The notes under the pieces are model-generated. The model was not told where the DNA came from, ran no database searches, and was given only the letters and a program-made list of their open reading frames with translations. From Ascidiella aspersa (taxonomy: Eukaryota), in contig OZ004608.1 in NCBI GenBank assembly GCA_963924565.1, positions 33,170,001 to 33,234,000 of the forward strand: a DNA stretch of 64,000 bases, in the 5' to 3' direction. Below are positions 3,142-59,400 of this stretch, in pieces. Position numbers and translations under genes: made by a program. How positions within the stretch are numbered: position 1 is the first letter of the stretch; each line of letters starts with the position of its first letter.

Positions 3142-3215
3142 GCCTGTGTAGCTCAGTTGGTAGAGCGACGGTCCCGATATGACCGAGGTTGGAAGTTCGA
3201 ACCTCACCACAGACA
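3142..3215 (+). pseudogene. tRNA-like element (tRNA pseudogene or head of a tRNA-derived SINE), nominal anticodon GAT
   Basis: A box TAGCTCAGTTGG, B box GTTCGAAC, acceptor stem GCCTGTG/CACAGAC (1 mismatch), D stem GCTC/GAGC, anticodon stem CGGTC/GACCG with loop CCGATAT. The T stem GGAAG/CTCAC is degraded and U33 is absent, so it is unlikely to be a functional tRNA. Confidence 0.7.
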
Positions 3216-4778
3216 AGTTGTTCTTCTAGACTTGCCTATGGCCTTGCTTGCACTACAATTCTGATCAGGCTGACTGGTTTTGGAAAGCCTCTTCAAAGGT
3301 GCACTATATATTGGGTTGCGTTATCGTTGACAAGTAAACTTGCAGAGGGCTTGATCGTAGAATACGCACTTTTTATCGGTACGATTTAGTTGATAAAAAG
3401 TAGTATTGCTTATATTTGGAAACATCAACAGTTCCGATTTTGTTTTAAATTTTGTCGCAAGATATATGGCCAATCAAGATCGCACAGAAATACATCAACG
3501 GTTGACTTTTTTGTTATATATAGTGATTTCGTCACGCAATGAAGCATTGTTTACCAGAAAAAAAGATCAATTTTTTCATCAGCATGAAAGTCATTAACGA
3601 CCAATTGTATTTTAATAAGGGCAAAAATCAAGCACAAGATAAAAAAAAGCCTGAATCGTTGGCATAATAACTCGATAGCGCACCAAGTGGTCATTTTACG
3701 ACAAATTTTAAACCACCAAAAAGGTAGTCGTTACTTCTTGAGGATTGTTTAACTCTACGTTTAGGTTTTTTGCTCTATTTATTTACGTTTTTAGATAATG
3801 TAAGTACACATACCAGGTACACTCAATTCGGGATTTGCTAACCAATACAACTTTTATTTTAGAGAGAGTCTCTTTCTTTCCTACAGGTTTATGATAGAAT
3901 GGCCTGTTGTAACGTGTTGTATTGTAGTTCATGAAAATGCATTCATGTTATCAGGAGAAAAAAATAACATTCAAGTGAATCATTTAGTTGTAATTTTTCG
4001 GAATGTAACTTTCTTGATATACAAATTAAATGAAACAGGCTTTGGTAGTCTAGTACATTTCTACAACACCCAGTTGTGTTATGACGATAAAAAGGAAGGT
4101 CATGTTGTAAGGACGGTATAAGTCAAACAAACTACGAAAAAAGTGAATTAACGTTATCAGGTTGAACATGTAAATCGGGATATTTTAGAGATCGAAAAGC
4201 AGTCGTTATACTAATTTTGTTCCTATTGTAAAAACGGAATACAATATATCGAAGCGCCAAAACGCATTCATAAATTTTAAGTTTAACTCTCGTTTAAAAA
4301 CAGTGTGAAGAGTGCTTGAACTTTCGTTTAAAAGTGTAACAGAACAGAGGGCGCTTTTTGTCTGTATAATCCTAAAAACGCATGAAACATTCGCGAAAAA
4401 CAGCTGAGATTTAAAACGCGAAAGAAAATTTCCATTTTAGAATTAAAAAGTGGCAACAAAATATCACGACATAAGTGTGAAAAACTCGCCCGCAGACTGA
4501 GATTTGAACTCACAACCCCAGGAATTCACAAATGCTGCCAAACACGACCCCTCTCATTAAAACAAAATTGACAATCTGGCTTTAGGCAAAGGCAGTAAAG
4601 GCGAGAAGATTTGAACTAAAAACCTCGGGAATTGGTGTGGTAATGACAGGATGGATTGGAACGTGACTCGGCTTTAACAACAAATAAATCCGACTAATGT
4701 TCTTGTTTGTTGCAAACGATTTACGTTGAATTATTTTTGATTGAAACAAAGCTTGAATTAGACTTTATTGATAATTAA

Positions 4779-16746: not shown

Positions 16747-19683
16747 ATGGTAAGTGGGTCTGCTTATGCCAGTATAACCAATGTTGAGGACTAGATTTGG
16801 CCAGATAGAAGTGTTACAGCAAACGAGTAGCATAACTGAAAACAATAAAAGTAATTCCTAAAGTGTCTAGTCGGTTTGGCTTTACTAGTGGAACCAAGAT
16901 TTAGGACTACATTTGACAAGCTAGATGTGCTGCAGTAAACCGCACTATAATCAACGAAGTGTAAAGTAATTTAAAAAATGCTCTAGTAAAACTTATTTTA
17001 GTAGAAAAACCAAGTAAATAGCCAATGATCGCCAGCTAAAGTTAATATTTGGAAGTCAACAATTTGTGATCCTTCAGATCAAACTTCAATACTAAAATTT
17101 GATTGTTTTAGGCTACAAACAGTTTTGTTCTATTAAACTATAAATCCCCGAATATTGACAGCATCCAACATAAACTGTAATTCGTTTAAACTTTCAAAGG
17201 CACCAGGACGCAAAGGAAAGAAGGAAGGAGGCAAGAAGACCCAGAAGGCTTCGTCCAATGTTTTCTCCATGTTCGACCAGAACCAGATCCAGGAATTCAA
17301 GGAGGTAAATGCAACGAACAAATGCGGACAGTGCAATACAACATAAAATAATGCTGCACCTATACCAGCTAAGCCAGTGGTTCTCAACCGCCGGTCCGCG
17401 TCAACTTTCCTGCCGGTCTGCCAAATATATTACAATTTTATAACCCAATTGCAAAATCAAGATGCAAGATGTTGAAGGCTTACCTATCAAATTTGGAAAT
17501 TTTTTGCCAGTTCCGTAATTTGCAGAATTGTGACATAACATAGAGTTGATGGTCTACTTTACACTTTATCAAACGTCACAATGCTGCAAGTGTTCTGCCC
17601 AACTGTTTATATTAATGGGTTACAGCTCGTTAAAATCTTAAAATTTAAGTTCATCATGGCTAGTTGCCATGTAGCTTAGTTAAATGCGGCAACTAAGAAG
17701 CTATTATCTCCCTTTGGTTCAAATAATAAGGAAAATTAATTTTGCTCAGGCCTTCTCCATGATCGACGCCAACAGAGACGGTTTCATCGATAAAATTGAC
17801 TTGAAGGACACCTACGCATCACTAGGTAAGCAAACCAAAGTAACTAAAGTTATATAAGTCAACTATAGTTTGAAAAATATGATTCAATGCACATATATAA
17901 AAAACAATAGGCCCTCAAAGCAAACAGAATAGCTAGCATTGGTGCCATTCTCTCGATTTTGGATTTTAAAGCGTATAGTCGGGGTTTAAGCAAGAAAATT
18001 AGGGTTTTTTTAATCAAATTTTCTGATATAACAGCAGCCTAACGAATATTCTCGTTTTTTCTAAACAGGAGTCCGTGACTTGAAGATGGAGAAGCTCGAA
18101 GCTATGATCTTGGAAGCTCCCAGTGCCATTAACTTCACAGTCTTCCTCAACATGTTGGCAGACAAGCTCCACGGTAAGCAAATGGTGACAGCTTTAAAAA
18201 TAAACCCTTAACTTCGCGACACTTCATTAGGTTAAAGACAGTTGTCTGATCTTTATACATTAAAAAAGAAAGACCGCCGTAATTTCTTTTTCCATCGATC
18301 ATCCACAAAATATCCAAGGTAATATTTGTATTTTTCGTAATATTCGTTGAGGTGCCATTTTCAGGAGTTAGTTCCAGAAAAAAGCAAGTAACACTGTCCA
18401 TGAGTTGAGTTTTAGAAAATGAATATTGATTTGTCTGAAAAGTTTAAAAAATATGTGCGCTACTGCTATTTGAACTTCAATATAGGTTTACATTTTGACT
18501 GTTTTCTTTAAACCTCACAGTATTCACAGTATTGCGAAATGTTGTTTCAAAAATTAAATTTAATTGCAATTTTACCCCGAGTGAATACTTTCCGCTACTG
18601 GGCGATAAAGCGCATTTTAATGCGGTGCGTCAATTCAACACTTCAGTCCAGTCGACCGATCAGCATAGTGAAAAGCTAAATCCAAAATTAACAATGCCCA
18701 TTAAGCTTCGGCTTTGACGACGAAAAATAACATCTTATCCTCTTTATTCAGGAACTGATCCCGAAGACACGATTGTGCAAGCCTTCAAACTGCTTGACCC
18801 AGAGAACAAGGGTGTGCTCCACAAAGACTAGTAAGTAGCGAACTTGACAATGTTTTGTTGTTGGGAGTGACAGGGTTTAAAGAGTATAAAGTTGCTGTTA
18901 TGGTCCTATCATTTATTAAATTTAAAGAAAATTAATAACAGTGTAATGAAGTAAGAAAAATGTTAGCAACTAAAACATGAAATGTGAAACTAATATCGGA
19001 TCGTTACGATGAGTAAATAAAATACTTTGTTACACACTAAAACATTGCGTTTTACAGATAAAACGATACATGTTTGATGACAAGATGTTTAATGTTTGTT
19101 TTTTGCAGCATCTCGCAATTGCTGATGTCCCAAGCCGACAAGTTCACAAAGGAAGAGGTAAGCAAAACGAAATTGCCAGCAAATGACCACATACCTCATC
19201 AGCGATTTTTTTTTAAACTGTCATATTGACGAAAAACCCAGGCATTTTTACAACATTTTGGTTGGTTTCGACCAATTCGCAAACCGACATTCTTATTTGA
19301 AAAAATGTTGTTGAGATAAAGCAGTGTTTCCTAATATTTTCATTACCAATCTAGTTTTCTGGCATAACGATTACCTCAAGTAAACTACAAAAAGCCTTAT
19401 TCTATATAAAATCTTGACATTAGAACTGCAAGCGAACATTAATAAATGCACGCATATGCCGACCATTCGTTTGGGTTACAACCGCGCTGAGTCGTATAAA
19501 GGAACCGCAGGGTGGCGCTGTTGTCGCACAAGGTCCTATAAAACGTTTTTGTTTTTTTCTTCAATTGCAACTCTGCTTTTACAGGTCGATCAGATGCTTG
19601 AAATCTCCCCTGTCGATGTTGCCGGCAATTTGGACTACAAGTCGCTCTGCTATATCATCACTCACGGACAAGAAGAGGAATAG
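16747..19683 (+). CDS. Mrlc: Myosin regulatory light chain, MYL2/MYL7 (striated)-type, paralog 1, 171 aa
   Basis: Exons 16747-16749 (ATG only), 17200-17304, 17750-17825, 18069-18173, 18752-18830, 19109-19157, 19585-19683; 516 nt, all GT-AG, phases 0,0,1,1,2,0. Contains [23 protein letters not shown]-hand [25 protein letters not shown] and C-terminal [25 protein letters not shown] at 19779. Confidence 0.96.
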
Positions 19684-29184: not shown

Positions 29185-32100
29185 ATGGTAAGTGAATGTC
29201 AGGGATAATGTAATGCATAAAGCTTTGTGTTTATTTGCGTGATATCGCTATTGAGAACATAAAATAAAAAGTTGAGAACATAAAATCGGTTTAGACTTTG
29301 GAGAAATGTATGTCCAACCAAGAACATCCATTTATAAGTAAATAACTATTGCTCTTCCAGTGCTTAACCATCTACAATTGGACGATTTAATTACAATTAA
29401 CCAGTTACAATTCGACGATTATGTGTAGCAATATCTAACTTCACAGCCAAATTCTAAGCAAAACTTTAAATCCAAAGGACGTACAATAGACAAAGTATTT
29501 TAAACTATCGACTTAAACTGAAACCATTCTTGTAATCGATCACATTTGAAGCCGAAACGTGGTTTGTTTTTCAGGCCAGTCGCAAAACCAAGAAGAAGGA
29601 AGGAGGAAAGATGAGGTCGCAGCGTGCCACCTCGAACGTCTTCTCCATGTTCGACCAGTCGCAGATCCAGGAGTTCAAAGAAGTAAGTTAAACTATATAC
29701 CGAACACGATCCCCGACGCTTTGCAAAGTAAAGCGATATGAGTCGTTTGCGTTCTAGGAAGCTCATATACACGAACGCCGGTAATGACAATTTACGTGGA
29801 AGTCTCGGCTCTCAAAGGCTTGCTAACATGCGTTTCTGAGATAATAACCATTCACAACTAACATTCACCCCTTTCCCAATTGTTCGTTTGACCCTCCCCT
29901 CCTTACTTATATGTTGGAAATTCACCCATAACTTATAGCAAGTGGTTCTAAACCTGAGGTACACTACAGTGCTACGCAAGCAGATTTCATTTAGGAAAAT
30001 AATAGAACGTGGATAATTACGGAGATGCCGTCTCTTTTTGCCACATCAAATGGGCATAATCTATGTAATTTTTGGCTAGTGTTGATATCGAACCTTTAAA
30101 AAACATTGCTAAATTAGCGCAAATGGTTTCTTTTAAAACCAGGCGGTACGTAACGACAGTAAAAACCCACTGTGGTACGCGGACAGAAAAGATTGAAAAC
30201 AACTGATTTACCAGGTTTAGGGTATAGGTGCTATGTGTAGGGCCAGGGTAAAAGTCCACAATAGCTCATTCCCTATACATAGCGTTGACACTGATCGGTT
30301 GAACCAGGTTCGCCGCATTACATCACTTACACACGAAAAGCATGGGATCGCGGCGGTCGAGCGCGCGCTTAATGTCATTTGAAGGATACCAACAGGTGAC
30401 TGACGACTGCTGAGCGTTGCAGCGGGGAGCCCGAAACCGATTAGCGGGGAATACCGACGGGCGAAACACGGGAACGGGAATTTGCCCAATGATCGATCTT
30501 GCGTCGTGCCGCTTATCGCTGCGGCATAACGGCATAGGTGAAGCGCTCTGCGTTCAACCAGTGGTTTCCAACCGGGGTGCCATTTCTAATGCCCAACGGT
30601 GCCGAGAGATATTTGAAAATCTTTAAGAATGATTTTTGTTCAACTCTTACAACTTTTTGTGTAAGATTAGAGTGATATAAATCCAATTAAAACTTCCTAC
30701 GTTGTGCAGACTTGATGTGTGTTGTTCCAGTTTCGTTTCTTGGGACATTCTAGCGATTTACCTACGGAAATATAGTGTAAGGGTGCCGCGATATATGTAT
30801 TATTTCTTGGTGGTGCCGCAAACATAAAAGGTGGAGAACCACTGGTTTAACAATTGTCACAAACGCTTGCATACGAATGTAATAAATTGGGAAGTAGTTT
30901 TCCAAGTTAAAACCCTGACATTAAACAGTTAATGAGCGTTGTTAGTGGTGCCGCAAGCCATAAAAGGTTAAACGCACGACGCCAACGAGCAAAGACACTT
31001 TCGCCGGAGACTGTAGTGTGTTCCTGCCTGCGGCTTAGGGATTGATTGCTTATTCGCAGCCCTGCCACTATACAGAAGCAGCTCTATACCAGCAGCAAGC
31101 AAGAGCTATAGCGCGCGTTCGAAGGTTGGATAACGTAAACAAGTCGCCGGTGCGCGTGCGGTTGTTTACGTTAGGTGGCGGTGATTCAGGGCGCTCGCGC
31201 TCTCGTCGACGAACGCTGTGGAAGCGCAGTGACAAAGCGAATATTGTGTTTCTTCTTGGAAACGCAGGAGGCCACAATGGCGACGAAGTGATATCCGCCG
31301 GTGCGCGCGCGCGCCGCAGCAAGGCAACGGCCCCGTAAACAATCGACATCATCATCGTATTGTGCTTCTTCTTCTTCTTCTTAGTTTAAAGTTGGCGCCG
31401 CCGCAATGGTCTGCGCTAACGAAATCGCCGATGACGGGTCTTTCGCGCGATTTGGCTTTTGAGTAAACAACAACATGCGCGAGATATGACAGTCGACATC
31501 ATTCCTTTGATTGTTTTTTCTTTTTTGCGAATTGATTGGGCGATGCACGGAGTTTAAAACTCTGCATACATTTCTTGCGATTCGAAACGCAAAATAATTG
31601 TGAGCCAGGCTCTTAATCACGCTAATGTAGGCCGCCAAATTATTTTGGGGGGGCCGTGTAGTAGTTTGCACTAGCGTTTCTCAACCTTTTCTCGCGGAGA
31701 CCCCAATTCTAACCATGTAACAGCGAAACTTAGGCGACCTAAATTCTCTAAAATGAACTTTTTGTAAGTCGACGCAATATCTGAATAGCATTAATAATTT
31801 CGAACTTAATTACTATACGCCATGTCGTCGTAAGTCTCCCGGAGTTTCTCAAATTTTAGCGATATTTAGTCAAAGAACTACTGCAGTCGGGGACCAAACT
31901 ATATCAAGCCGCGACACAATTTCTGAACAGTATGTTGATAAACACTGGTCCAGACAAAAACAACAAGTGGCGAAAAATATTTTTCGAGGCCACAAAATTA
32001 CATTTCGAATTAACCTAAGCATTAGCTGCGTTAAAGTCATGTACAAAACAGATGGAAAATTATAAAGGGCCTGGTCTATGTAGGCGAGATTTCATTTAAT

Positions 32101-35100
32101 TCGATTGCCCTTTAAAAAATAAAAATAGCCAGGTTTAGTTTTCCATCTGTTCCTTCGCCTTTGTTTAGCCCGGGCCGGGTTTAAATGGCAGCCCTTTTGA
32201 AGTCCCCCCGGATTTTTGGCCTGTTTTTTCGGCGTAATTTTGCGGCCGCCGAGTATGTTGGCCACAAAGCGGATTGAGCACGATAGAACGCCGCGTCTTT
32301 AAGTTGAACAAACGGCACGAAACGCGGACAGGAGAACATAGGAGACTGATGACACACATTTGAACTGGGATGGGGCTCAAACCGAAGGAAAGACGCCAAC
32401 GTCCTTTTTCCTTAGTGCAAAAAGGAACCGACGCGATTTTTCTTGAAACCTTACGAATTCGGCAAAACTATTGAAAAACACCTAGCACGTTTGAGCGTTT
32501 TGGAACAGCTGTATACGGGAACGTACTGCTATGTTTTACCGTATATTTAAAGTAATTAAATTCAATAAAAAAGGTAAAACAACAACTGAACATATAGAAA
32601 CTCGAACGTTATGTTTGATTCTTTAACAAACATCAATGATTTATTAAATGTATTTTTCAAAAAAAAACAATCCTAGGGAAGTTTAGTAAAATAGCTGGAG
32701 CTTTTAAACGAACGTTTTAAGGTGCAATTAAACATTACCCGACGGCTGCGGCAGAAAAAATATCAATATAAACCGACTTACGAAAGCTCTAAAATATTTT
32801 TTTTACACACAGGCCTTCACTATGGTTGATGCGAACAGGGATGGCTTCATAGACAAGGAGGATCTGGCTGACACCTACGCCTCTTTAGGTACGTGCTTTC
32901 ACCATTGGTGTAGACGTTTTTTTCATTCTGGTATATAGACTTTCTCCGCAGTCAGACTGTGTTATTGTTCTATCATTGAACAGCGATATAATCCTGCTAT
33001 AATCTGAACGCTTTAGTATTTAAGAAACCGTTAACAAACATTAAAACGTAGAATAAAAACTCTTTCATATTTCTGATCATCTGGAGAATTAATACCCGTC
33101 TTAACTTTTAGTTTTTTGTAATGTTGTTAATAAAAGTCCAAAGAATAACTTTTCTACTAGATAAGTTAATTTCGATAACTAAAGGTATGACTTACTTTTA
33201 AACAGTTTTATTTTACACGTCTTTTAATGAGGCTTACTCAAGCCCAATAGATTTGATTTAAAAATATGCTTCACACATTTTTAACACGTTGATTTGACAA
33301 CGAAATCGCAGAATAAATTACAACATCGCAGGTTTTCTAAATTGAAATCCTTTTCTACAGAAGTAAGCGTTTTCGAAAACTCCAGAACGAAGGTTTAAAT
33401 ACCTATACAATTTACAAAATAGGCGTGTTGGGTTCTGTCGACGAAGCGTGTTAAGTTAGACGACATGCAGAAGTCGCATTCGTTTATAAACTCCTGTAAA
33501 CTGAATACCGAGGTGTACGTATAAGGTTTGGGTCAAGAGTGCAGGCGTTCATACGGGGATTACGTAAGCCGCCTTCGCGCTATTGGTCGGCCGGTTATTG
33601 CAGCTGTCAGGAATAGCGCGCCTGTTCTGCTAGTATAACCGACACCGCTCATCGTAAAATGAACGCGTATCGGCCCATCGCTGTGCAGGCCCATACAGGC
33701 AGCCGCTAAAGACACTGATTATGCCTTTTAGTTGGCAAAACGCATATTTTATATCTTCGTTTCTCAAGATATTTAAAAAAATTAAAACTTCTATCGTCGG
33801 CATTATGTGTTCTGTTTGCGGGCAAGATTTTGTTGTGGAAAAACATAGTAAGTCGCCTTGACTTTATTTTAAACCGAATTTCATAACCGTGTTCTTTTTT
33901 TCCCGGAGGGTAGGCCACACAGTTAGAGGCGAATCCTCCATGTGGCTATTTTCCAACTCAATTGGCGAGAAACCTCGTTTATATTGAATTGATTTAAGGC
34001 ATACACGAAATATAGCCTTTAGAAACGCGCTGGGACAAACTCGATGCCAAATTCTCTTTATCCACCTTTTAATATGAGCCCGTGTCAATAAGAGCCGGTC
34101 AAACTAAAAGCAGCCGCATAAACAGGCTTTAACCGAGGCCCGCTTTAAAACAGCCGCCTATAAACTTACAATTTGGCAGACGCGGGCTAGAGCTCACATG
34201 TAATTGAGTTTATGGTAAAAAACAGACAAATACGGCTATAGCCAAGTAATGTCTTGTCTTGCTATTTCAAATATACTTGCCAACCTTTAGTTACAAATTA
34301 CGGATGCCTTTCAAAGGAAACCGGTCTGCATTTAAACAGCCGCCTATAAACTTACAATTTAGCAGTTTTATTGTAAAGAAACTTTTATTGTTCTTTCTAA
34401 TGCTTTGCCAAAAAATAAAAACTCATAATGGAGAATCTTTAAATGAAAATACTGTTGCTGCCATGCATTGTTTCAATTGTAAAATTGTTTTTCCGACACA
34501 ATTTTATTAAAGTACAAACGTTACGATTACCTATTCGGGCAATCTTTTTCAGGGCAATATTAATCCTTTACGGAAATGCGTTTTAATGGAAACCGGTCCG
34601 CTTTACAAGACATTTTAGGCTCACGCGCTATAGAGCTCGTGTATTTTCTTAAGGTTCGCCGTCTTGTTTGTTTAACGCGTGTCTTGCACGAGGGCGGCAC
34701 TACCGGCGTGACGTCACACAAGATAAAGCGGGTTCGGAATAATAACTCGGGCCGTGACGTGTCGTGACGTAACAAACGGTGGCGGGGTGCGTTCGGTTGT
34801 GACGTTGTCTGTACAGGAAGGGAAATGTTCGGGGTTGGTGAAAAGGATCTGCGATAATTGCGATGGGTGAGGTTTAGTTGGGCGTTTGCGCGCGCGTGTG
34901 TGTGTCTACGTGCGTGCGTGCGCACGTGTGTGTGTGTGTGTGTTTATGAAGTGAGAAAATAGGGGCAAAATCATCGGAAATCTACAACATTGTATCACAA
35001 AAGTAACCCCATAGAGCTACACTGAATTTTCAAAAACACACCTTTTTGAATTTCCAAGTTGGTAAAAAGCATCAGGAGCTTTATGTCTTAGCGGCGAATC

Positions 35101-38100
35101 GAATTTACATAAAACACTTCTTATGAATTCATTTTTGTTTTCTAGAATATTTGTAAATCTTACATAGTGCTTATATTAGTTGCGATCCCTCGTAACATCA
35201 TTTTTAAACAAGAGAGCACCAGGCTTCAATTAATCAGAAATAATTAGAAAATAATTTGTTATTTCATAAAGCGACGCCCAAACGGAAAAGATATAGATTA
35301 CAAATAAAACTCAAAAGTTTAAAATACAGTATCGAATATTTTTTACAGAAATATTTATTATATACAAGCGAGAACCCACTGACTGTGGCTTCATGTTCCA
35401 TAAATATAGGACCTTTTAAAAAATAAATATGTAACGCGTGGTTGAATTACACGTGCAGATGTTACCAACTTTAAATCATAAGTGTTGTAGGGTTGTTCAC
35501 GGGCTTTAATACTAATGAAAGGGCCCATATACAGAAGGCAGTATTGTTCTGTACATCCTAACTTAAAAAATAAGCAGCGTCCAATACTTCCGAGAATTAG
35601 CATGGATGTTTCTCGACGTGCTATTAAACGCATTTTAAACTATGAAGTGGTTTCTTCTGCATAAGTCGCTTTGTTATAATATACTATAGCGCTTATATAT
35701 AATGCAGAGTATAGCCGAATCACAACTGTTGACCCGCCGCCATATTCCCCGTCTTTCCGCTGCGAACTCACTTCACGCCAGCGAGTGACAGAAGCGTTGA
35801 GAGCGTTGAAAGCGTCCGAAGCGCTGCGGGCGGTTCCGGCGTTGCTTGGTTAAATCAACGCCGGCCAGAGCAGAGCGATTTAAACGCGATGTTTAAATAA
35901 ACAAAAGCGGAAATGTGAGCGGACGCGAATCCAGATTTGACCCCAGTTTACACCAAAATTATAGCTAAGCATTTTCCAAACGGATACAAAGGTTCGGTGC
36001 GTATTTCCATATAAAGATAAAGCCGCTAGTTTGAAAAAAATCCTAAACGCTTTTAAACAACTAAAAACATTGCTAATTTATAATTCGGTAATAACTTTAA
36101 CTTTCTCTAAATTAGCTAAACAATTTCAGAACGAATACAAGGTCCAGTTTCAAAACAACACGACAGCAGCTAGTTGAAAAAAATCCTAAACGCTTATAAA
36201 AGACTAAAAACATCCCAAGATATAGTTCACTGATAACTTTAACTTTGTCAAATCGGAAATTGTGTTACAACCGCCATTGGTTGCACAAATATAAACCCGG
36301 CGTCTTCTATTAAAATATAGCGCCGCCACACGTGTAGCCATTTACATACAGGAGTCTATAATTCAATGTACAGATATTTTCAGATCGTCCTTAACAGGCT
36401 CAAATAGCTACGGAACCCGCCTTTAATAACTGCAACGTTATCCCGCATCCAGTGCTCTGTTTAACAATGATTTGAAGCGTTTTAATAGCAGAAGGCTTCA
36501 TTTTCCGCAGTCCGATTCGACAATACAGCAGCTATTGTACTTGATTGTTATTCCCGTTGTTTTGTGTGGCCGCAGGTCGTGCCCTATCCGACGACCAAAT
36601 AGCCGCCATGCTTGCCGAGGGTAAGGGTCCCATCAACTTTCAAGTCTTCCTCGGGATGTTTGGCGACAAAATATCTGGTAAAAATCGCCATTAAGGCATA
36701 TCACGTTCGACGTGGCATGGTGGAAACCATTCTAAACGCATTAAATCAATCATTGTCATCCGGTTCGGAATCAAGTCGAACGTTTTCTCGCCCAAACTTC
36801 TCCTTTGTGAATGGATAAACCAACCATCATCTCACCTGACAGTCAAAATCTCATCTCGTTTCATTTTTGGTGAACCTAACACCGTTTTCCCTCTGTTCAA
36901 CCAGCGTGCATGTATACTTGCATCAACGTTGTTTTTATGCTCATATTTTGGCAAAACCAAGGCTTAAAATGGGTTAAATTGGCGGGAATAAGAGTTCGAA
37001 GTGGCCGTCTTACTCATATTTCTTTCAGAGTGAATCTGAAAATGCTTAAATAGGAAAGAATGGAGGTGCAATGTTACCATCCCATTTGACGCAGATTGAC
37101 AGACAGAGGGTTTAGGTTTTAAGCGTGTTATCGGCCTGTGATTTACGATATGTGCGCACAGGAACTAATAAGAGCGACAAGGAACTCGAAGAGATGCTGC
37201 AGCAGGCGCCTGGGCAACTAAATTTCACTGTGTTTCTGTCCATGATGGGCGATAAGATTAAAGGTACATCCTGCACTCTGCACAACAGTAACACAAAAAT
37301 GCACACAGCACCTGAAACTAGCACATTTGTAGCCTAATAGGTAAACGTTTAATTTCGTTGCGCTACTGGTAATTCATTGCATTAAGACTGGACAGTGATG
37401 TTCCTTCAAGTAGAAAAAACGCCACAGCTGCAACAAAAGTAATTGCCCCACTTCACACAATCAGCAACACGATATTTTCATTTTTTGAGATATATAGACA
37501 AGTATACAATTTGTTTCCTGTTAAACTGGCAAATTTAATTAATAAAATAAATTAAAATTTTAATTAGATTTCCAGATGCTATTTGCACAATATTCACTCA
37601 ACAAAAATGAAAGGGACACAGAAAACCAATAGCTGATTAATTTTTAACACCAATTTTGAAAAAAACGGATTGCGTAGAATAGATATCAAAGCATATTGAT
37701 GAAATTAGGGTTTCGACAAGTTGGACTTTATCGCGACCGCGGTCACTTAACTATATAGGTGCATGCGGCATGGGGTGACATTGCACCTGCAAAAGAGCAA
37801 TCCGTTTAAATGCCCAAGATTCGCGCCGAGCCATTGTGCGCGCTTTCGGTCCGTTTTCCGGGCCTGGTGTCGCGCGGCGGAAAGGAGCGGCGCTGATAAA
37901 CTGCCTGACAGATGTACTGCTGCTCTCGTTTCCGTTTGCGGCACCACGCGCTTAGCGTTGCGCTAGGAGCTGTCAGTCAAACGGTTCGAACGGCCTGAGC
38001 CCGGCAGAAACAAGAGTTGAGCTGCTGCTGCTGCTGCTGCTTTTCAACTCTCGCTGACTCCCGGATAAACGCGTCACGCAAGTTGCTCGAACCAGCAGCG

Positions 38101-41100
38101 CTTGTTGCAGCGATCTAGCTCGCGTTTTTTCTGCGTTTTTTCTTAGTTGCGTTCAACATGCATGCTTCCCTCATTGTATTGCGTTTTTTTCTGTTTTTTT
38201 GGGGGGGGCGGAAGGTGGGATTTTAACGCAAGTTCACCCGCGGGAGCGAAGGTTTAAAGAAGTTTAAAAGAACTATTGCAGACAGATTTCGTTTTTCGAT
38301 GTTTTTGGTATAAGTCTGCTTTCTGAGAATGACAGCTATGATATTTTAACACAGTTCCACGGCTCAAAAAGAGTTGAAAAGCACTGGCTTACACCACTGC
38401 CTAAATCTCATCACGTAACCCTCTAGTTAACTTGTGCGTTTTTTCGTGCTTTTCTCGTTTTGTTCGACACGCATGCCCCCGCAATCGCATGACCCGCGTG
38501 TTTTTTTCTTGTTTTTTTCGGCCGGATGGTCGGAAATTTAAGTTCACCGCTGTAGTGATACAAGTTCGCTTCACCGCTTTCATGCCTGCTCCATTTGAAC
38601 TGTTCAAAATTGTACACGTTAATTTCAGCTTTATTATTGCTATTTTTTAGTGCAACTTTGAACACATTCAGGGTGAACTGACTGGAATAACTTTTTAACT
38701 TATAGTTTACTTTGGATGTCCTTAGGCTACAGTTTTCGCATTTGAATCTACAAAAAAACAATTGGCTTGTCTAAATTGACAATACGACCCAAATTGTTTT
38801 TAGTGGCAATGGGTCCAAATAAACATTACTGTTGGCGTCCACAAAGTGCCTTATTTTAAACAACATATATATACTAGGAAGTTGCCAGTGCTAAACGTAG
38901 AATCCATCCAATCTATGCACAGTAACCGTAAACGGGCATTTGGAATATTATCTCGCCCATTCACCACAAAAAAACAATTGGCTCACTTAGATTTTTCTCG
39001 CAGGAACTGACCCGGAAGAAACAATAGTCCAGGCCTTTAAGGTTTTGGATGCCGACGACAAAGGAGTTCTCAACAAGAAAGTGTGAGTTCGAAATTCCTA
39101 GTTTTAACAGCGTACATGGGCAGTAGGGATGTCTGATACATTTTATTCCTATAACGATAAGAAATATTTAAAAAAAAATTCGCAATCCATTCTGATGCCA
39201 AATGACGTCATTATCACGCTCAAACAAGCAAAATGTATGAATTCGAAATGTTCTAAGGTTTTTTCCCGGGATTCTAGATCACAATTTGCTTCAGCGTTAG
39301 GCAGTTTAGTTACCTTCAGTTCAACCCAGGGAGTCGAACCGTTTGACTTTTCCGGTTCAGGTTCGGTTCGGCTTCAAGGATTTTTTTCTGAATACGGTTC
39401 AGTTCCGGTTTCGGTTTGGAGGAATTTAAAAGTTCCGGTTCGACCATCGTTATTTCAAAACCGGTTCATTAAGTTCCGGTTCGGATATAATATAAGTTGC
39501 GTTAAATCTAAAAATGTGGGTCAATAAATGTATAGAATAATCTTTGAATAGTAAGTCAGTCAATCAAAGTTACGTGACGTATTTAAAAAACAGCAACTGC
39601 TTATTGAAATATCTAAAACATAAAAAAAATTAAGGTTTTTTAATCAATATTTAAATTCGTTCATAGAATTTTAAACATAGCATAACTTGAGTCTTTAAAA
39701 TACAAGTTGTGACGTCATGCTGGAGTGAACCGGTTTTGTTAACAGGTTTGGGTTCGGTTAAGGTTCTTTCAAATTATTTGGTTCAGTTCCGGTTCGGCTC
39801 CTTGAAATCTTACAAAAAATGGTTCAGGTTCGGTTATGGTTCGGAAAAAATTGACCCAAAACCGGTTCATAAAGTTCCGGTTCGGTTCCGGTTCGACTCC
39901 CCAGTTCAACCTACTATTTTTCGACAAATTTACCTTTCAACGTAAAAAATTGTGTTGAATCGCAAATCATGGCTGAAATGTCCATATGAATTTGGCATAG
40001 GATCGGCACAGAAACCACCCTAGTATCGGCCGAGTTCCGATAATACTAATGAGCATCGGCTTTGACATAGGCTACCTAATCTGCAATTATATTCTTTTTG
40101 TTGTGGCTTTAACGCTGTACGTGTATTTTGCAGATTGGCAGATATTCTAACCACACAAGCTGACAGATTCAACGTGCAAGAGGTAAAAATCGTAATACCT
40201 CATGATAAGATTTTTCATGCAAAACAAAAAACAAAAATTGGACTTTTTTAAAAACAGTTATTTGATTTTGAGAGTTTAGACTTTAGAGCAGTGGTTCTTA
40301 AACTGGGGTCCAAGGACCCCTTAGGGGTCCGTGAACTAGTTTTAGGGGGTTCGCGAAGGCCAAATTGAAATATTGGTATATATTTAGGAAGTAATCAATT
40401 TTTCTAAGGAAAGAGTTTAATTAAAAATAAAACATTTTTGCACTGAATGTCTCTGTTTCTATTTTCCTTTTCACATTTTGTGGACCTAAAACTGCGGATT
40501 TCTGCAGTCTATTTGTATTGTGACGTCAATTCATGACGTCATATTTATTAAATTTCCTGCACACCGTGGTCCACGTGAAGCAAAAACAAATTTTGGGGGT
40601 CCGCGGTGAAAAAAGTTTAAGAACCCCTGCTTTAGAGTGTCATTTTTTAACCTTTTTCGCAACTTTGTTTTTAATTTCGTTTATATAGGCGCCCTTTTAA
40701 CTTATTAAAATGTGTTGAAACTTGTAAAATCTTATTTTCTGATACAAATAAAAGAGCATTTAAAAAACAGAATAAACCGGGCTACAAAGTTGCCATTAGT
40801 GTTTCCTGTAAAACTAGCAAAAATAACAAAAACGTTGTCACACGGTTATAATGGTCGGAAGCTGCAGTTAGACGAAGAAGGAATATCAAAGCACATATGA
40901 AAGTTTGGTAGCATTTTGAACGTTTCGAATATTTCTTTTTTAACACGTTGAAAATAAATCAAGAGTTATTCGAAACGTTTAAAATTCTACTTCAATATGG
41001 GCTTTGATATTCTTATTTCGTCTGGTAAATTATAATTTCGCCGGTGTGAGACAAATATAAGAGCGTTACAAAGAGCAGTAGAAATTCGGTTACAATATTG

Positions 41101-41565
41101 CCCTCAGTGTTTCCTGAGAAACTAACGGAAATACTAAAAACCGTTTTTTCGCACGTTTATAATGGCTGGAGGTTGTAGTTAGACGTAGAAGGAATATTAA
41201 AGGCCATATGGAAGTTGGTAGCATTTTGAACGTTTCTCTTTATTAACACGTTGAAATGAATTAAGAGTTATTCGAAACGTTCAAAATGGTAAATATGGGC
41301 TTTGATATTCTTATTACGTCTGGTAAATTAGAATTTCGCCGCTGTGATATAAATGCAACAGTGTTACAAAGAGCGGTACAAATCCGGTTGCAAAATCGCC
41401 CTCAGTGTTTCCAGAGAAACTAACGGAAATACTAAAAACCGTTTTTCGCACGTTCATCTTTTTCAGTTGAACCAGATGTTCGACATTGCGCCAATCGATG
41501 CGGCCGGGAACTTGGACTACAAGTCGCTCTGCTACATCGTCACCCATGGACAAGAAGAGGAATAG
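29185..41565 (+). CDS. Mrlc: Myosin regulatory light chain, MYL7/MYL2-like, paralog 2, 171 aa, with duplicated (alternative) exon 4
   Basis: Exons 29185-29187 (ATG), 29575-29682, 32813-32888, 36576-36677 or 37162-37263, 39004-39082, 40134-40182, 41467-41565; 516 nt with one exon 4; intron positions and phases match paralog 1. [41 protein letters not shown]-hand [13 protein letters not shown]-terminal [25 protein letters not shown] at 41976. Confidence 0.95.
29940..30206. mobile_element. Diverged hAT-like element
   Basis: Ends AAGTGGTTCTAAACCT / AGATTGAAAACAACTG with internal GGTAC repeats. Confidence 0.5.
30559..30844. mobile_element. Non-autonomous hAT-like element
   Basis: Ends CAGTGGTTTCCAACC / GGTGGAGAACCACTG, internal GGTGCCGC repeats. 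Confidence 0.7.
31672..31947. mobile_element. Diverged hAT-like element
   Basis: Ends TAGCGTTTCTCAAC / GTTGATAAACACTG. Confidence 0.5.
34885..34943. repeat. (GC)n/(GT)n microsatellite
   Basis: GCGCGCGCGTGTGTGTG...GTGTGTGTGTGTGTGTGT. Confidence 0.85.
36576..36677 (+). CDS. Mrlc: MRLC gene 2 exon 4a ([35 protein letters not shown])
   Basis: CGCAG acceptor, GTAAAA donor, 102 nt, phase 1-1, homologous to RLC EF-hand 2. Not shown in frame in the ORF track. Confidence 0.88.
37162..37263 (+). CDS. Mrlc: MRLC gene 2 exon 4b ([35 protein letters not shown])
   Basis: CACAG acceptor, GTACAT donor, 102 nt, phase 1-1, homologous to RLC EF-hand 2. Confidence 0.88.
39327..39903. mobile_element. Non-autonomous hAT element with many GGTTC/CGGTT subterminal repeats, apparently nested in an older element (~39124-40074)
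   Basis: TIR CAGGGAGTCGAACCG / CGGTTCGACTCCCCA; perfect 8-bp TSD GTTCAACC. Flanks begin TAGGGATGTC and end with ATCGG/CCGAT repeats. Confidence 0.88.
40289..40629. mobile_element. Non-autonomous hAT (Charlie-like) element
   Basis: TIR CAGTGGTTCTTAAACT / AGTTTAAGAACCCCTG; perfect 8-bp TSD CTTTAGAG. Confidence 0.92.
40780..41455 (+). repeat. Tandem duplication, ~300-bp unit, ~2.2 copies, each full unit containing a family A MITE
   Basis: YAGTGTTTCC recurs at 40797, 41105 and 41403 with colinear similarity between units. Confidence 0.85.
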
Positions 41566-56411: not shown

Positions 56412-59400
56412 ATGGTGCTAGTGGACCGACACCTTGGCTCCGTAACCGCAGCAATGAACTCAACCTTTCCACCGACTCCTTCGCACGCGCCAACAGCCCA
56501 GGAAATGATCGACGTGCCTTCGATGTACGAGAACCTCTACCAGGCCGGCAACGTTCACATGGCGGGCTCTAGGGCATCGCATCCCGGCCATTACTCTCTT
56601 GAGTACTCGAACGGCGCCGCGGCGGCCAACCCGTACCTATGGGCGGCCGCAACCAACCCCTACAACTCGTCCTATATGCAAGGCTACGGTACAAGTCACC
56701 ACCACGCTGCTGCGGTTGCTGCGGCCGGTCAACGACAACTGTTTGGACACCACGCCTCTCCTCATCACACCACAGGATTCGGCTGCGACTTCCCCTGGCT
56801 TTCTCTTAGCAGCCAAACTGAATTGTTCAAGATGGTGCGACCACCCTACTCTTACTCTGCGCTCATAGCCATGGCCATTCAGAACTCTAAGGAAAAGAAA
56901 CTGACCCTGTCCGGCATTTACAGTTACGTTGCCGAGAACTTTCCCTTCTATAAGCGGAGCAGAGCAGGCTGGCAGAACTCGATAAGACACAACTTGTCGC
57001 TGAACGATTGCTTCAAGAAGGTGGCTCGTGATGAGGACGACCCTGGAAAGGGAAACTACTGGGCGCTTGACCCAAACTGCGAGAAGATGTTCGACAACGG
57101 AAACTTCAGGTGAGAAACTAAAAGTTTTTGCGTAGTAAGAATATCAAAGCCCACACAGAAGTAGGCATCATTTTGAATGTTTCGAATAACTCTTTAATCA
57201 TTTTCAACATAGTTCAAAACGATACCTACTGATGTATCGCCTTTGATATTCCTAATGTGTCTTACTACAACCTCCAACCATTAGGCTCCACAGGAGCTTT
57301 TAATTTTTGCTCCAATTTTTTGGGCGTCCTTTACAAGTCGCCCTCATTGGGTAACTGTATTCTTAAACAATTTAATTGAACCTGATAAAAGGCGACATGT
57401 GTAATATGTCTAAACGTTGGAGTATCATTACAATAGTCAGAAGAGCTGTTTCAATTAATATTATGCATAGCTGCAACACTTTATGGAGATGTTATATAAC
57501 GGCGTATGGCCTTAAAATTTCTATTTAGACTTGTTTGTGCCCAATTTGGTTTCTATTTAAAAGAACAATTTGGATTAGAATTTGAATAGCTTAGATTGAA
57601 AAACGAAAATTTCAAAGAAGGAATGGGAAATTAAAAATCCAGACATCCTTTAACGACCCGAAACGCACTGGGTATGGGTTAATTTCAAGACTTTTGTCTT
57701 AGAGCGGAAACTCTGAACAAATTTTTAAAGGGGAAAATTTCAAAGTCGATCGTTTAGCAAAATAGAGTTTAAAGACTATTACGAGTCCTTTCTCAGCTTT
57801 ACGCCTTTACACTAAAGAGGTGTTGACCACGATTTGTCTTGTTTTTCGCGGGTTATAAGTGAAAGTTACGGGAGACGATACGACGGGCAGCGGCGGCCAT
57901 TTTGGTTCCGGCTTCAGACTCAAACTTGTACCAAGTCTGGATTTACCTTACCGCGCATCTTAAACAAACGTCGCTCTACTGTCGCGCGTATAGGCGAAAC
58001 AAATTAACAAGCGTCGTCGCCATTCCCGTGAAGTGACTTCAAAAACAGCGTTCAGGTTGCAAAGCACAAAACCTGTATTGATGCGATTGCGGTTTGCAGG
58101 GCACGAAATTCCTCAGCTCCGGCGAATTAATTAATAGCTCCAAGCACGGACGTACTGGAACAAAATCGGGCGATTTTCGCTTTTGATAAACAAGCGTCGA
58201 CGGAAAGCGCAGGAAACGCGAAAGTAAACAGTTTACATGCGACGTAAGCGGATTAAGATCTAGCTCGCGTCGCTATCTCTTCTTGAGATCGCTGGAAATT
58301 TTCCTTTCTGCCATAAACGCGACCGAGTGACAGGCGATTGTTAGATAACAATCGGCAGCGCGCGGTCATCGCCCATTCCAGCAACGCATTACGACGCACC
58401 TTAACGCGTGTGGCAATCAACGCAAATCAATTTCAAAAAATCAACTCTAAGAAGCATTTTTATAGAGATTTGACATCCTTAGAATCACCGAGAGTTGTTG
58501 GTCAGTTACACATGATTAAGGGAATTCGGATTAAAAGCTGAGTGGTGTGGCCACATTGAACTATGGAATTAGAGCGATTAATAATACCTTTAAATTTTCT
58601 TAAATTTGTCTAAAAAATTTCGTGGCTGCTTCAAAACAAGTGTGTTTTTAAATGCAGCTTCAAACCTAAAAATCCAATCTAAAAAGGGTTTTCGCATCCT
58701 AAGAATTATAAATTATCGGGTGCTAGTCAGCTACAGAGAACTAAGAGTTGTGGTGGAAATCTTTTTATGGCCACATTGAACGTTGGAATTTATAATCTAT
58801 GCTTACTATAAATTATAATTTAACAAAACCAATTAAAATTATAATCACAATAGAACAGTTACTTTTTTTTCCAAAACTTGTTAGAATAATCGTTGCTTCT
58901 CCGAAACAAAGTGTGTTTTTAAATGCAACTTAAAAAAGATATAACAACCGTAAAGAAAATGTTTTTTAAAAAGGTTAAACGCCCAACGAAGTAACAACAA
59001 TCATATAGTACCGCGTTTCATCAGCGACAAAAAAACCGTCGACTTGTTAGTTAAAAAAACAACAAAAAATGCACACAATCTGAAAAACACTCTCGGCAAG
59101 GTAAACAACTCATCGGATAGCGCAGATGCGGGAAAAGCGATCGTAACGCGAAAAAGCAGCAGCAGTTGTTTCAGCGGTCAAAACCGATAGTTCAGCTAAA
59201 CAGAGTTAAGTCATTTCTACGGCGCTCCTATAGAGTAAAACGACACCAGGCCACGGCCAGCAGTCGTCTCGAAACCTTCGTTCAGGTGCAAGAGGCTGAG
59301 GCGGTCGACAATAGATTGAGACGCAAAGCGGCGCCCTGAGCACTAAAGCCCCTCGAGGGGCTACGTAAATTTGGGGCTCCTTTTACAGACGCGCGCACCC

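What the first reader, a model, noticed from the sequence alone, without database searches (positions are those of the whole stretch)
36576..37263. Duplicated, probably mutually exclusive exon 4 in a myosin regulatory light chain gene: a MYL7-like versus non-muscle-like EF-hand 2 switch
Seen: two intact exons 484 nt apart, both exactly 102 nt, both phase 1-1 with AG/GT ends, both encoding the same RLC segment. 4a is [35 protein letters not shown] and 4b is [35 protein letters not shown]. They are strongly diverged yet keep the structural residues (ML, NF-VFL-M, GDKI-G), which suggests an old duplication under purifying selection. Both have weak donors (GTAAAA, GTACAT). Paralog 1 has a single exon here. 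Established: vertebrate atrial MYL7 has EGKGPINF at this position, whereas MYL2 and smooth/non-muscle RLCs have EAPGPINF. Vertebrates make these isoforms from separate genes; mutually exclusive exons are well known in myosin heavy chains and tropomyosins, but I do not know of one in an RLC EF-hand. Inference: one gene switches the N-lobe surface that contacts the heavy-chain neck to serve different myosins or muscle types (for example heart versus body-wall muscle). Either exon alone gives a normal 171-aa chain; including both stays in frame but would duplicate EF-hand 2.
Basis: partly seen in the sequence, partly recalled or inferred. Interest (0 to 1): 0.88.

Follow-up and report, generated by a model that had tools for sequence, protein, structure and literature searches.

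The report
Alternative exon-4 pair in tunicate RLC
A muscle myosin regulatory light chain gene in this sea-squirt-like genome has two interchangeable copies of the exon for its second EF-hand; the pair is conserved across tunicates and used one at a time, and public gene models in three other species already show both forms.

Summary
Exons 36576-36677 (4a) and 37162-37263 (4b) are both 102 nt, phase 1-1, AG/GT-bounded and open. Both match the same regulatory light chain (RLC) segment, the second EF-hand of the N-lobe.

The mutually exclusive reading is well supported.
- In this species, one run that behaves like RNA joins exon 3 to 4a and 4a to exon 5 at depth about 25,000, while 4b sits at intron background.
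- A second RNA run puts about 88 read-bases on 4b and none on 4a. This is thin evidence.
- RefSeq isoforms in Ciona intestinalis, Clavelina lepadiformis and Styela clava differ only in this segment.
- A pelagic tunicate mRNA contig runs 3→4b→5→6 and skips 4a.
- In an exon tree, 4a-types and 4b-types each group together (support 100/98 and 97/93).
- Silent sites are saturated while replacement differences stay at 0.06-0.33 per site, so both exons are under purifying selection.

The "MYL7-like versus non-muscle-like" labels are not supported. The EGKG motif varies among 4a orthologues, and the genome has a separate non-muscle RLC. Tissue assignment was not tested.

I found no paper describing the pair, but automated annotation already models it. 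It is a new member of a known kind, of moderate interest.

The parts
29575..29682 (+). Paralog 2, exon 2 (N-terminal extension with the RATSNVF phosphorylation-site motif). The exon holding the start codon lies upstream and was not located.
   Evidence: AG|GCC...GAA|GTAAGT borders. 84-95% identical to orthologous exons in L011-L013.
32813..32888 (+). Paralog 2, exon 3 (EF-hand 1, [13 protein letters not shown]). It ends in phase 1 with the first G of the Gly codon.
   Evidence: In run X3 the loose end before 36576 is the 3' end of this exon, showing a 3→4a splice.
36576..36677 (+). Exon 4a: EF-hand 2 (helix C, loop, helix D), 102 nt, phase 1-1. It is the form used in the highly expressing sample.
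   Evidence: Joint 36677→39004 at depth 25,000 and exon depth 28,868 in X3. Orthologues in Ciona, Clavelina, Styela, Halocynthia, L013 and L008 group together at 100/98.
36678..37161 (+). 484-nt intron between the two alternative exons. It contains GCATG at 36715 and TGCATG at 36907.
   Evidence: It is spliced out in a rare X3 contig (depth 7.24) that still keeps the intron after 4b.
37162..37263 (+). Exon 4b: the alternative EF-hand 2 exon, 102 nt, phase 1-1, with a poor pyrimidine tract and a GTACAT donor. It is the minor form in the samples seen.
   Evidence: About 88 read-bases in RNA run X4 with zero in the flanking intron bins and zero on 4a. Copies 87-94% identical exist in other assemblies. 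The 4b group has support 97/93. pN is 0.06-0.25 against saturated pS.
39004..39082 (+). Paralog 2, exon 5 (start of the C-lobe, GTDPEET...).
   Evidence: Depth 66,055 in X3. Reads in X4 and X3 run on into exon 6 sequence.
40134..40182 (+). Paralog 2, exon 6.
   Evidence: The loose ends at 39082 read ATTGGCAGATATTCTAACC..., which is the start of this exon.
41467..41565 (+). Paralog 2, last coding exon, ending in a TAG stop.
18069..18173 (+). Paralog 1, the single exon 4 (105 nt), for comparison. The segment sequence is [34 protein letters not shown].
   Evidence: It groups with other P1-type exons, apart from 4a and 4b.

Best explanation
The second of two tandem muscle RLC genes carries a pair of mutually exclusive exons, 4a and 4b. 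Each encodes the whole second EF-hand of the N-lobe (helix C, the non-binding loop and helix D). One pre-mRNA gives two 171-residue light chains that differ only in these 34 residues. The pair arose by tandem exon duplication before the tunicate lineages sampled here split, and both copies have been kept by purifying selection. In this species 4a is the form of the sample where the gene is very highly expressed. By inference that is adult body-wall type muscle, because the Halocynthia 'smooth muscle' RLC protein is 4a-type. 4b is a minor form used where the gene is expressed at a low level. Proposed mechanism (inferred): 4b has a poor pyrimidine tract and a non-consensus donor, so it is skipped by default and needs a tissue-specific activator. 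When 4b is chosen, 4a is skipped. The changed helix C/D surface would then tune how the light chain grips the heavy-chain neck or packs in the switched-off head-head state. Shown here: the anatomy, conservation, selection, 4a-only mRNA in this species, and 4b-only mRNA in relatives. Inferred: the tissue assignment, the splicing regulators and the biochemical consequence.
For: Anatomy. Both exons match the same RLC segment. Pfam's EF-hand pair model spans residues 36-93 of the Ciona 4b isoform, and exon 4 covers residues 65-99. This species: X3 shows joint 36677→39004 at depth 25,000, a loose end before 36576 equal to the exon 3 end, 4a depth 28,868 and 4b depth 7.24, the same as the intron. 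X4 shows 0 on 4a and depth 0.91 in the 4b bin, with 0 in both flanking intron bins. Relatives: RefSeq isoform pairs on the same contigs differ only in this segment in Ciona intestinalis (P0095/P0113), Clavelina lepadiformis (P0094/P0111) and Styela clava (P0096/P0114). In Styela the exons lie in the same order, 130 nt apart. Both exons are also present in the same order in L013 and L008. Contig L007 joins exon 3 directly to 4b and skips the upstream 4a. Contig L020 is a fully spliced 3→4b→5→6 mRNA. 4a-only transcripts are common in metatranscriptomes. Exon tree: the 4a group has support 100/98 and the 4b group 97/93, each with Ciona, Clavelina, Styela and pelagic members. Selection: pS is 0.62-1.0 (saturated) against pN 0.06-0.33, and dN/dS is 0.04-0.19 where it can be computed. 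4b donors are weaker in three of the four species that keep 4a (GTACAT, GTTTCT, GTTTCC; Styela has GTAAAA) than where 4a is not found (GTTAGT, GTAAGA).
Against: In this species, direct evidence for 4b use is only about 88 read-bases in one run, too few for the joint table. X3 is not recorded as RNA; I treat it as RNA because of its exon-versus-intron depth. A 4a→4b joint exists at depth 7.24 in a partly processed contig, so splicing chemistry does not forbid joining the two. The double form would stay in frame, so nonsense-mediated decay cannot police it. No conserved intronic element or competing RNA pairing was shown. Two related assemblies (L011, L012/L014) seem to lack 4a altogether. RefSeq isoforms are automated models, and I could not see their read support. 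Tissue and stage of the runs are unknown.
Confidence: 0.85

Rival explanations
1. 4b is a conserved-looking but unused leftover in this species. The gene makes only the 4a form, and 4b reads are splicing noise.
For: In X3, 4b is at intron background (7.24 against 28,868 for 4a). X4 has only about 88 bases on 4b. The 4b acceptor and donor are poor.
Against: 4b is intact and 75-94% identical to orthologues across species whose silent sites are saturated. No variant lies in it in three DNA or RNA runs. It is the only exon 4 in L011 and L012. 4b-only mature mRNA exists in a relative. X4 shows 4b and no 4a.
Confidence: 0.07
2. Both exons are normally included together, giving a 205-residue chain with a duplicated EF-hand 2.
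For: Double inclusion stays in frame. One 4a→4b joint was seen.
Against: The 4a→5 joint has depth 25,000 against 7.24 for 4a→4b. The contig with the 4a→4b joint still holds the next intron, so it is an unfinished transcript. None of the full-length proteins examined from Ciona, Clavelina, Styela, Halocynthia or metatranscriptomes carries both segments. The only 'two-stretch' tunicate protein is an ORF read through the intron of a genomic contig (P0005).
Confidence: 0.02
3. The choice of exon 4 is not regulated on its own. It follows the choice of alternative first exon or promoter, so the real switch would be transcriptional.
For: In RefSeq, Styela X2 (4b) starts MSSQK-ASRK and X3 (4a) starts M-ASRK. 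Clavelina X2 (4b) starts MKK-ASRK and X3 (4a) starts M-ASRK.
Against: Ciona X1 (4b) and X2 (4a) share one N-terminus, and the pelagic 4a and 4b mRNAs share one N-terminus. Automated isoform numbering does not show linkage. Exon 1 of the window gene was not located.
Confidence: 0.06

Closest known systems
RefSeq models 'myosin regulatory light chain, smooth muscle isoform X1/X2' of Ciona intestinalis, with the matching isoforms of Clavelina lepadiformis and Styela clava
   Same: They are orthologues of the window's second RLC gene. The isoforms differ only in the exon-4 segment, one 4a-type and one 4b-type. Window 4a is 86% identical to Ciona 4a.
   Different: They are automated annotation with no described function. 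Those species also have a modelled skip-both form of 139 aa (P0140, P0137), which was not seen here.
Halocynthia roretzi 'Myosin regulatory light chain, smooth muscle' (UniRef entry, P0142)
   Same: It has a 4a-type segment (GRGIKDERIRDMLAESSGPVNFQIFLGLFGDKLSG) and falls in the 4a group.
   Different: Only one form is on record. It anchors 4a to adult body-wall type muscle only through its name, plus my recollection that the protein was sequenced directly.
Mutually exclusive exons of muscle genes: vertebrate alpha-tropomyosin exons 2/3 and 6a/6b, insect Mhc exon clusters, and the vertebrate MYL1 essential light chain (MLC1f/3f). Established knowledge, not tested here.
   Same: These are tandem, homologous exons of the same length and phase. 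One is chosen per transcript, so one gene serves different muscles.
   Different: The gene and the protein part differ. Here a whole EF-hand of the regulatory light chain is swapped. The tropomyosin-type steric block (donor too close to the branch point) is unlikely with 484 nt between the exons. NMD policing cannot apply because the double form stays in frame.
Vertebrate RLC paralogues MYL7, MYL2, MYL9/MYL12 and MYL5
   Same: They are the same protein family. Vertebrates make muscle-type RLC variety that includes differences in this segment.
   Different: They are separate genes. In the exon tree, 4a and 4b form tunicate-only groups and do not join fish or coelacanth MYL5 or the non-muscle rows. 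No MYL7 or MYL2 sequence with a tool-given id was available, so that specific comparison was not made.
Ascidian troponin I tissue-specific alternative splicing (MacLean, Meedel and Hastings 1997, cited in PMC6589888)
   Same: It is another tunicate sarcomeric gene that makes heart and body-wall isoforms by splicing where vertebrates use paralogues.
   Different: It is a different gene, and the mechanism is cassette exons rather than a duplicated exon pair.

Membership tests
Myosin II regulatory light chain | Two EF-hand pairs of about 170 residues, with best matches to solved RLC chains | tested here: met
   Each exon-4 copy alone matches only RLC chains at E of 1e-5 or better, with calmodulin weaker than 1e-3. 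All six coding exons match RLC orthologues. Pfam EF-hand_7, EF-hand_1 and EF-hand_6 match the Ciona orthologue.
Myosin II regulatory light chain | N-terminal extension with basic residues and the phosphorylatable Ser in R-x-T/S-S-N-V-F | tested here: met
   Exon 2 encodes [23 protein letters not shown]. Phosphorylation itself was not tested.
Myosin II regulatory light chain | Binds the IQ2 region of a myosin II heavy chain | not tested
   No heavy-chain sequence was paired with it and no complex was predicted.
Mutually exclusive exon pair (tandem exon duplication) | Adjacent exons of the same length and phase that are homologous to each other | tested here: met
   Both are 102 nt, phase 1-1, 484 nt apart, with 15/33 identical residues and in-window tblastn E=4.6e-7. 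The same holds in L013, L008 and Styela.
Mutually exclusive exon pair (tandem exon duplication) | Mature transcripts contain the first exon without the second | tested here: met
   X3 joint 36677→39004 at depth 25,000, with 4b at background.
Mutually exclusive exon pair (tandem exon duplication) | Mature transcripts contain the second exon without the first | tested here: inconclusive
   In this species there are only about 88 read-bases on 4b in X4 and none on 4a, with no joint listed. The feature is met in relatives: L020 is a spliced 3→4b→5→6 mRNA, L007 joins 3→4b, and RefSeq has 4b-only isoforms.
Mutually exclusive exon pair (tandem exon duplication) | Transcripts with both exons are absent or rare | tested here: met
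   The 4a→4b joint has depth 7.24 against 25,000 and sits in a contig that keeps the next intron. No full-length protein examined has both segments. Contigs can drop rare forms, so 'rare' is shown but 'absent' is not.
Mutually exclusive exon pair (tandem exon duplication) | Both copies are kept by purifying selection in other species | tested here: met
   pN is 0.06-0.33 against pS 0.62-1.0. Each type groups together across tunicate orders.
Orthology of 4a to vertebrate MYL7 and of 4b to non-muscle MYL9/12 | The exon groups with that vertebrate or non-muscle class, and the diagnostic motif is conserved | tested here: not met
   The EGKG motif is variable among 4a orthologues. 4a and 4b form tunicate-only groups apart from the non-muscle rows, including the genome's own non-muscle RLC. 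MYL7 itself could not be included.

The most novel reading that the evidence does not exclude
Swapping whole EF-hand or neck-binding modules of the regulatory light chain by arrays of alternative exons may be an old and widespread way for invertebrates to tune myosin II regulation, and one that has largely gone unnoticed. In tunicates it would be a two-way switch of EF-hand 2, older than the split of the ascidian orders and pelagic tunicates sampled here. That switch would mark distinct muscle or cell types (for example heart or juvenile versus body wall) and change heavy-chain neck binding or the switched-off head-head state. Elsewhere the arrays are larger: contig L019 has 2, 2, 2 and 6 copies of exons 2, 3, 4 and 5.
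Probability: 0.4. Interest if true: 0.65.

Novelty: new member of a known kind. Interest (0 to 1): 0.45.

Why it matters
Tunicates are the sister group of vertebrates and have few sarcomeric genes. Where vertebrates use separate RLC genes for different muscles, tunicates appear to get part of that variety from one gene by swapping a 34-residue EF-hand. The pair is present in Ciona, which is tractable for experiments. Exon-specific probes, CRISPR deletion of one exon and minigenes could therefore show which muscles need which form, and what EF-hand 2 of the RLC contributes to neck stiffness or to the switched-off state of myosin. It is also a clean, small model of an in-frame exon pair that cannot be policed by NMD or by a short intron. 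Public annotation already contains both isoforms, so the gain is recognition and characterisation rather than discovery of the sequences.

Tried and rejected
1. Earlier notes of this scan: nothing near the window or under the words tried.

2. Literature: six searches and two papers read. None describes alternative exons in a tunicate or other RLC EF-hand. The tunicate muscle review mentions paralogous or alternatively spliced isoforms in general, and Mrlc genes by name only. One search failed on a malformed term.

3. Competing RNA pairings: 55 inverted pairs were found in 6.1 kb. Two flank 4b (37061-37078/37774-37791 and 36859-36873/37598-37612). No control or conservation test was made, so I do not use them.

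4. Rbfox-type (T)GCATG motifs: there is a cluster after 4b in L008 only and no consistent placement across species, so they are not used for the window.

5. Search for a 4a relic in L011 and L012/L014: only matches at E of about 6-36 (for example ...QVNL*MFCDK). These are not significant, so 4a is 'not found' there rather than shown to be lost.

6. Structure model of the 4b isoform from a 15-row alignment: mean pLDDT 44, too poor for surface analysis. Only the helix order was used, and no fold search was run.

7. Look-ups that gave nothing useful: Ciona P0095 was not on record. P0009 came without DNA. P0006 and P0091 proved to be two contigs of one assembly.

8. The spliced model was searched exon by exon, by reference. 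The joined protein was never sent to any search, fold or look-up tool. The exons were joined only inside a local script to count codons and stops.

9. No complex prediction was run.
Full report
**What is in the sequence**

The window holds two myosin regulatory light chain (RLC) genes in tandem on the + strand. Paralog 1 lies at about 17.2-19.7 kb and paralog 2 at 29.6-41.6 kb.

Paralog 2 has these coding exons:
- exon 2: 29575-29682
- exon 3: 32813-32888
- exon 4a: 36576-36677
- exon 4b: 37162-37263
- exon 5: 39004-39082
- exon 6: 40134-40182
- exon 7: 41467-41565, ending in a TAG stop

The small exon with the start codon was not located.

Each is 102 nt, phase 1-1, bounded by AG and GT, and open, and they lie 484 nt apart. 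They share 15 of 33 residues and 48 of 102 nt.

Searched alone against all PDB chain sequences, each matches only myosin RLCs over the same residues, about 60-93. The E-values are 3.4e-6 for 4a and 3.4e-8 for 4b, with calmodulin far behind. Either exon alone keeps the frame open to the stop. Both together also stay in frame. That was a local count; the joined model was never sent to a search tool. Paralog 1 has one exon of 105 nt at this position and no second copy.

**RNA evidence in this species**

One search for sequencing runs and one reads call were allowed.

Run X3 is not recorded as RNA but behaves as RNA. Depth is 28,868 over 4a and 66,055 over exon 5, against 0-10 over introns. X3 shows three things:
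- A joint 36677→39004 (GT..AG) at depth 25,000.
- A loose end before 36576 that is the 3' end of exon 3.
- 4b at 7.24, the same as the intron beside it.

So the abundant mRNA in X3 is 3→4a→5.

One X3 contig of depth 7.24 joins 36677 to 37162 and then runs on unspliced to 37665. This is an unfinished transcript in which 4a was joined to 4b. It shows the two exons can be spliced together, but at about 0.03% of the main form.

Run X4 holds raw RNA reads, of which 6% were read, and expresses the gene weakly. Seven reads were laid. None falls on 4a. Depth is 0.91 in the 4b bin with zero in both flanking intron bins, and about six reads cross exon 5 into exon 6. That fits a 4b→5 splice, but it is too thin for the joint table.

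Runs X1 and X2 are evenly covered like DNA. No variant lies inside 4a or 4b in X1-X3.

**Evidence from relatives**

A phmmer search with 4b against 1.84 billion representative proteins gave 88 hits. Among them were short ORFs from other assemblies that are 87-94% identical to 4b. There was also an ORF from Tara metagenome contigs (P0005) that reads a 4a-like exon, an intron and a 4b-like exon in one frame.

Contig L007 is from a JGI sample whose spliced contigs indicate RNA. It joins exons 2-3 directly to the 4b-like exon at the genomic AG, skipping the 4a-like exon that lies 240 nt upstream in genomic contig L008. Contig L020, from a close relative at 93-95% nt identity, is a fully spliced 3→4b→5→6 mRNA without 4a.

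A search with P0015 returned named tunicate proteins. Aligned, they show isoform pairs that are identical except in the exon-4 segment:

| Species | 4b-type isoform | 4a-type isoform | Skip-both form (139 aa) |
|---|---|---|---|
| Ciona intestinalis | X1 | X2 | X5 |
| Clavelina lepadiformis | X2 | X3 | X4 |
| Styela clava | X2 | X3 | none seen |
| Pelagic tunicate transcripts | P0092 | P0093 | none seen |

The Halocynthia roretzi 'smooth muscle' RLC is 4a-type. The Ciona savignyi UniProt entry is 4b-type.

In the Styela genome the two exons lie in the same order, 130 nt apart. A Forkhead gene follows the RLC gene there, in L013 and in the window. L013 also has both exons in order.

Region-restricted searches found 24 protein clusters with a 4a-type segment, mostly transcript-derived. 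Only 4 had a 4b-type segment. This is consistent with 4a being the major form.

**Age and selection**

In a tree of the 35-residue segments, the 14 4a-type rows form one group (100/98) and the 10 4b-type rows another (97/93). Each group includes Ciona, Clavelina, Styela and pelagic members. Paralog-1-type, non-muscle, fish MYL5 and other invertebrate rows fall outside both. With only 35 columns, the deeper branching is unresolved. The duplication therefore predates the split of the tunicate lineages sampled here.

Between species, synonymous differences are saturated (pS 0.62-1.0) while non-synonymous differences are 0.06-0.33 per site for both exons. dN/dS is 0.04-0.19 where it can be computed.

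In two other assemblies (L011, L012/L014) the orthologous gene shows 4b but no recognisable 4a. There the 4b donor is closer to consensus (GTTAGT, GTAAGA). In three of the four species that keep both exons it is weaker (GTACAT, GTTTCT, GTTTCC); Styela has GTAAAA. That pattern fits 4b being a regulated exon where it has a competitor and a constitutive one where it has none.

**What it encodes and how it may work**

Exon 4 covers residues 65-99 of the Ciona protein. Pfam's EF-hand pair model spans residues 36-93 of the 4b isoform but only 36-77 of the 4a isoform. The exon is therefore the second EF-hand of the N-lobe, and 4a is the more derived copy.

A structure model was of low confidence (pLDDT 44). 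It placed two helices and a loop in this exon, as expected for the RLC fold.

Residues that separate the two types:
- 4a: R at position 2, AE[GS]xGP[IV]NFQ, G[ML]FG, and K[IL]SG.
- 4b: APGQLNFT, [SA]MMG, and KIKG.

The most likely mechanism is inferred, not shown. 4b has a poor pyrimidine tract and donor, so it would be skipped unless a tissue-specific factor activates it. The two forms would give light chains with different helix C/D surfaces, for different heavy chains or different regulation.

The known ways of enforcing exclusivity do not fit. The intron between the exons is 484 nt here (130-770 nt elsewhere), too long for a simple steric block. The double form is in frame, so decay of the mRNA cannot remove it. 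I found no supported RNA pairing or conserved motif.

The labels 'MYL7-like' and 'non-muscle-like' do not hold. The EGKG motif of 4a is not conserved among 4a orthologues. The genome has its own intronless non-muscle RLC (L002 1309-1830), whose segment is only 48% identical to 4b. The tree gives no link between either exon and the non-tunicate classes included. MYL7 itself could not be included, because no tool gave me its sequence.

**Novelty**

I found no paper on this exon pair. RefSeq already lists both forms as automated isoforms in three tunicates. The kind of feature, tandem mutually exclusive exons in a muscle gene, is classical. I therefore rate it a new member of a known kind, real and conserved, of moderate interest.

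**A related observation**

Two unrelated contigs show that arrays of alternative exons occur in RLC genes of other animals.
- L019 has 2, 2, 2 and 6 copies of exons 2, 3, 4 and 5. The six exon-5 copies all have an AG acceptor and a TA|GT[AG]AGT donor.
- L016/L018 has three copies of exon 2.

The organisms are unknown.

Noticed in passing
L019:1-4462 (Logan contig from run ERR14986678, organism unknown): An RLC gene with tandem arrays at four exon positions: exon-2-like x2 (56-127, 345-407), exon-3-like x2 (1196-1276, 1401-1481), exon-4-like x2 (1739-1846, 2009-2125) and exon-5-like x6 (2196-4086). All six exon-5 copies are open and have an AG acceptor and a TA|GT[AG]AGT donor. The best match is a Saccoglossus RLC. 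It looks like an insect-Mhc-style set of alternative exons in a light chain.
   Followed up: partly
L016:5329-6606 and L018:9050-10327 (metagenome contigs; L017, from a sample labelled BRYA16, carries the same gene): An RLC gene with three tandem copies of the N-terminal exon 2 ([48 protein letters not shown]...RSTSNVFAVFNQNQIQELKE). It has only one exon 4, which is fused to exon 3.
   Followed up: partly
L011:9630-10090 and L012:8101-10084 (two ENA assemblies): The orthologous gene sits in the same tandem arrangement with a paralog-1-like gene. It has the 4b-type exon but no recognisable 4a, and its 4b donor is closer to consensus. This may be a secondary loss of 4a. Weak matches at E of about 6-36 could be relics.
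   Followed up: partly
L008:625-687: Three TGCATG motifs lie 80, 95 and 137 nt downstream of the 4b-like exon of a pelagic tunicate. This is the classic layout of an Rbfox-dependent splicing enhancer. No such cluster is present in the window, L013 or Styela.
   Followed up: partly
L002:1309-2849 (G000 contig C6, about 4.95 Mb): An intronless 173-residue non-muscle-type RLC ORF (1309-1830). About 640 nt downstream on the same strand is an ORF that looks like the N-terminus of a non-muscle myosin II heavy chain, so the light and heavy chain genes may be neighbours.
   Followed up: no
L003 and L005 (G000 contig C6, 3.894 and 3.901 Mb): Two further paralog-1-like RLC genes about 6.4 kb apart. Their exon-4 peptide is identical to that of paralog 1 in the window. 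This is a multi-copy type, as expected for larval muscle genes.
   Followed up: no
window:44920-46719 and 56835-57110: Forkhead-domain coding sequence lies downstream of paralog 2. An RLC-Forkhead neighbourhood is also seen in Styela clava (L015) and L013, so the synteny is conserved.
   Followed up: partly
window:37061-37078 / 37774-37791 and 36859-36873 / 37598-37612: Two inverted-repeat pairs (18 nt at 89% and 15 nt at 93% complementary) bracket exon 4b and could loop it out. They are among 55 pairs in 6.1 kb, with no test of conservation or chance.
   Followed up: no
P0140 (Ciona intestinalis X5) and P0137 (Clavelina lepadiformis X4): RefSeq also models a 139-residue form that skips both 4a and 4b and so lacks EF-hand 2. 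It may be splicing noise from two weak exons or a real third form.
   Followed up: no
window:32874 (exon 3): The X3 transcript reads ACA where the window has ACC (Thr). This is a silent polymorphism in the loose end that identifies the 3→4a splice.
   Followed up: no
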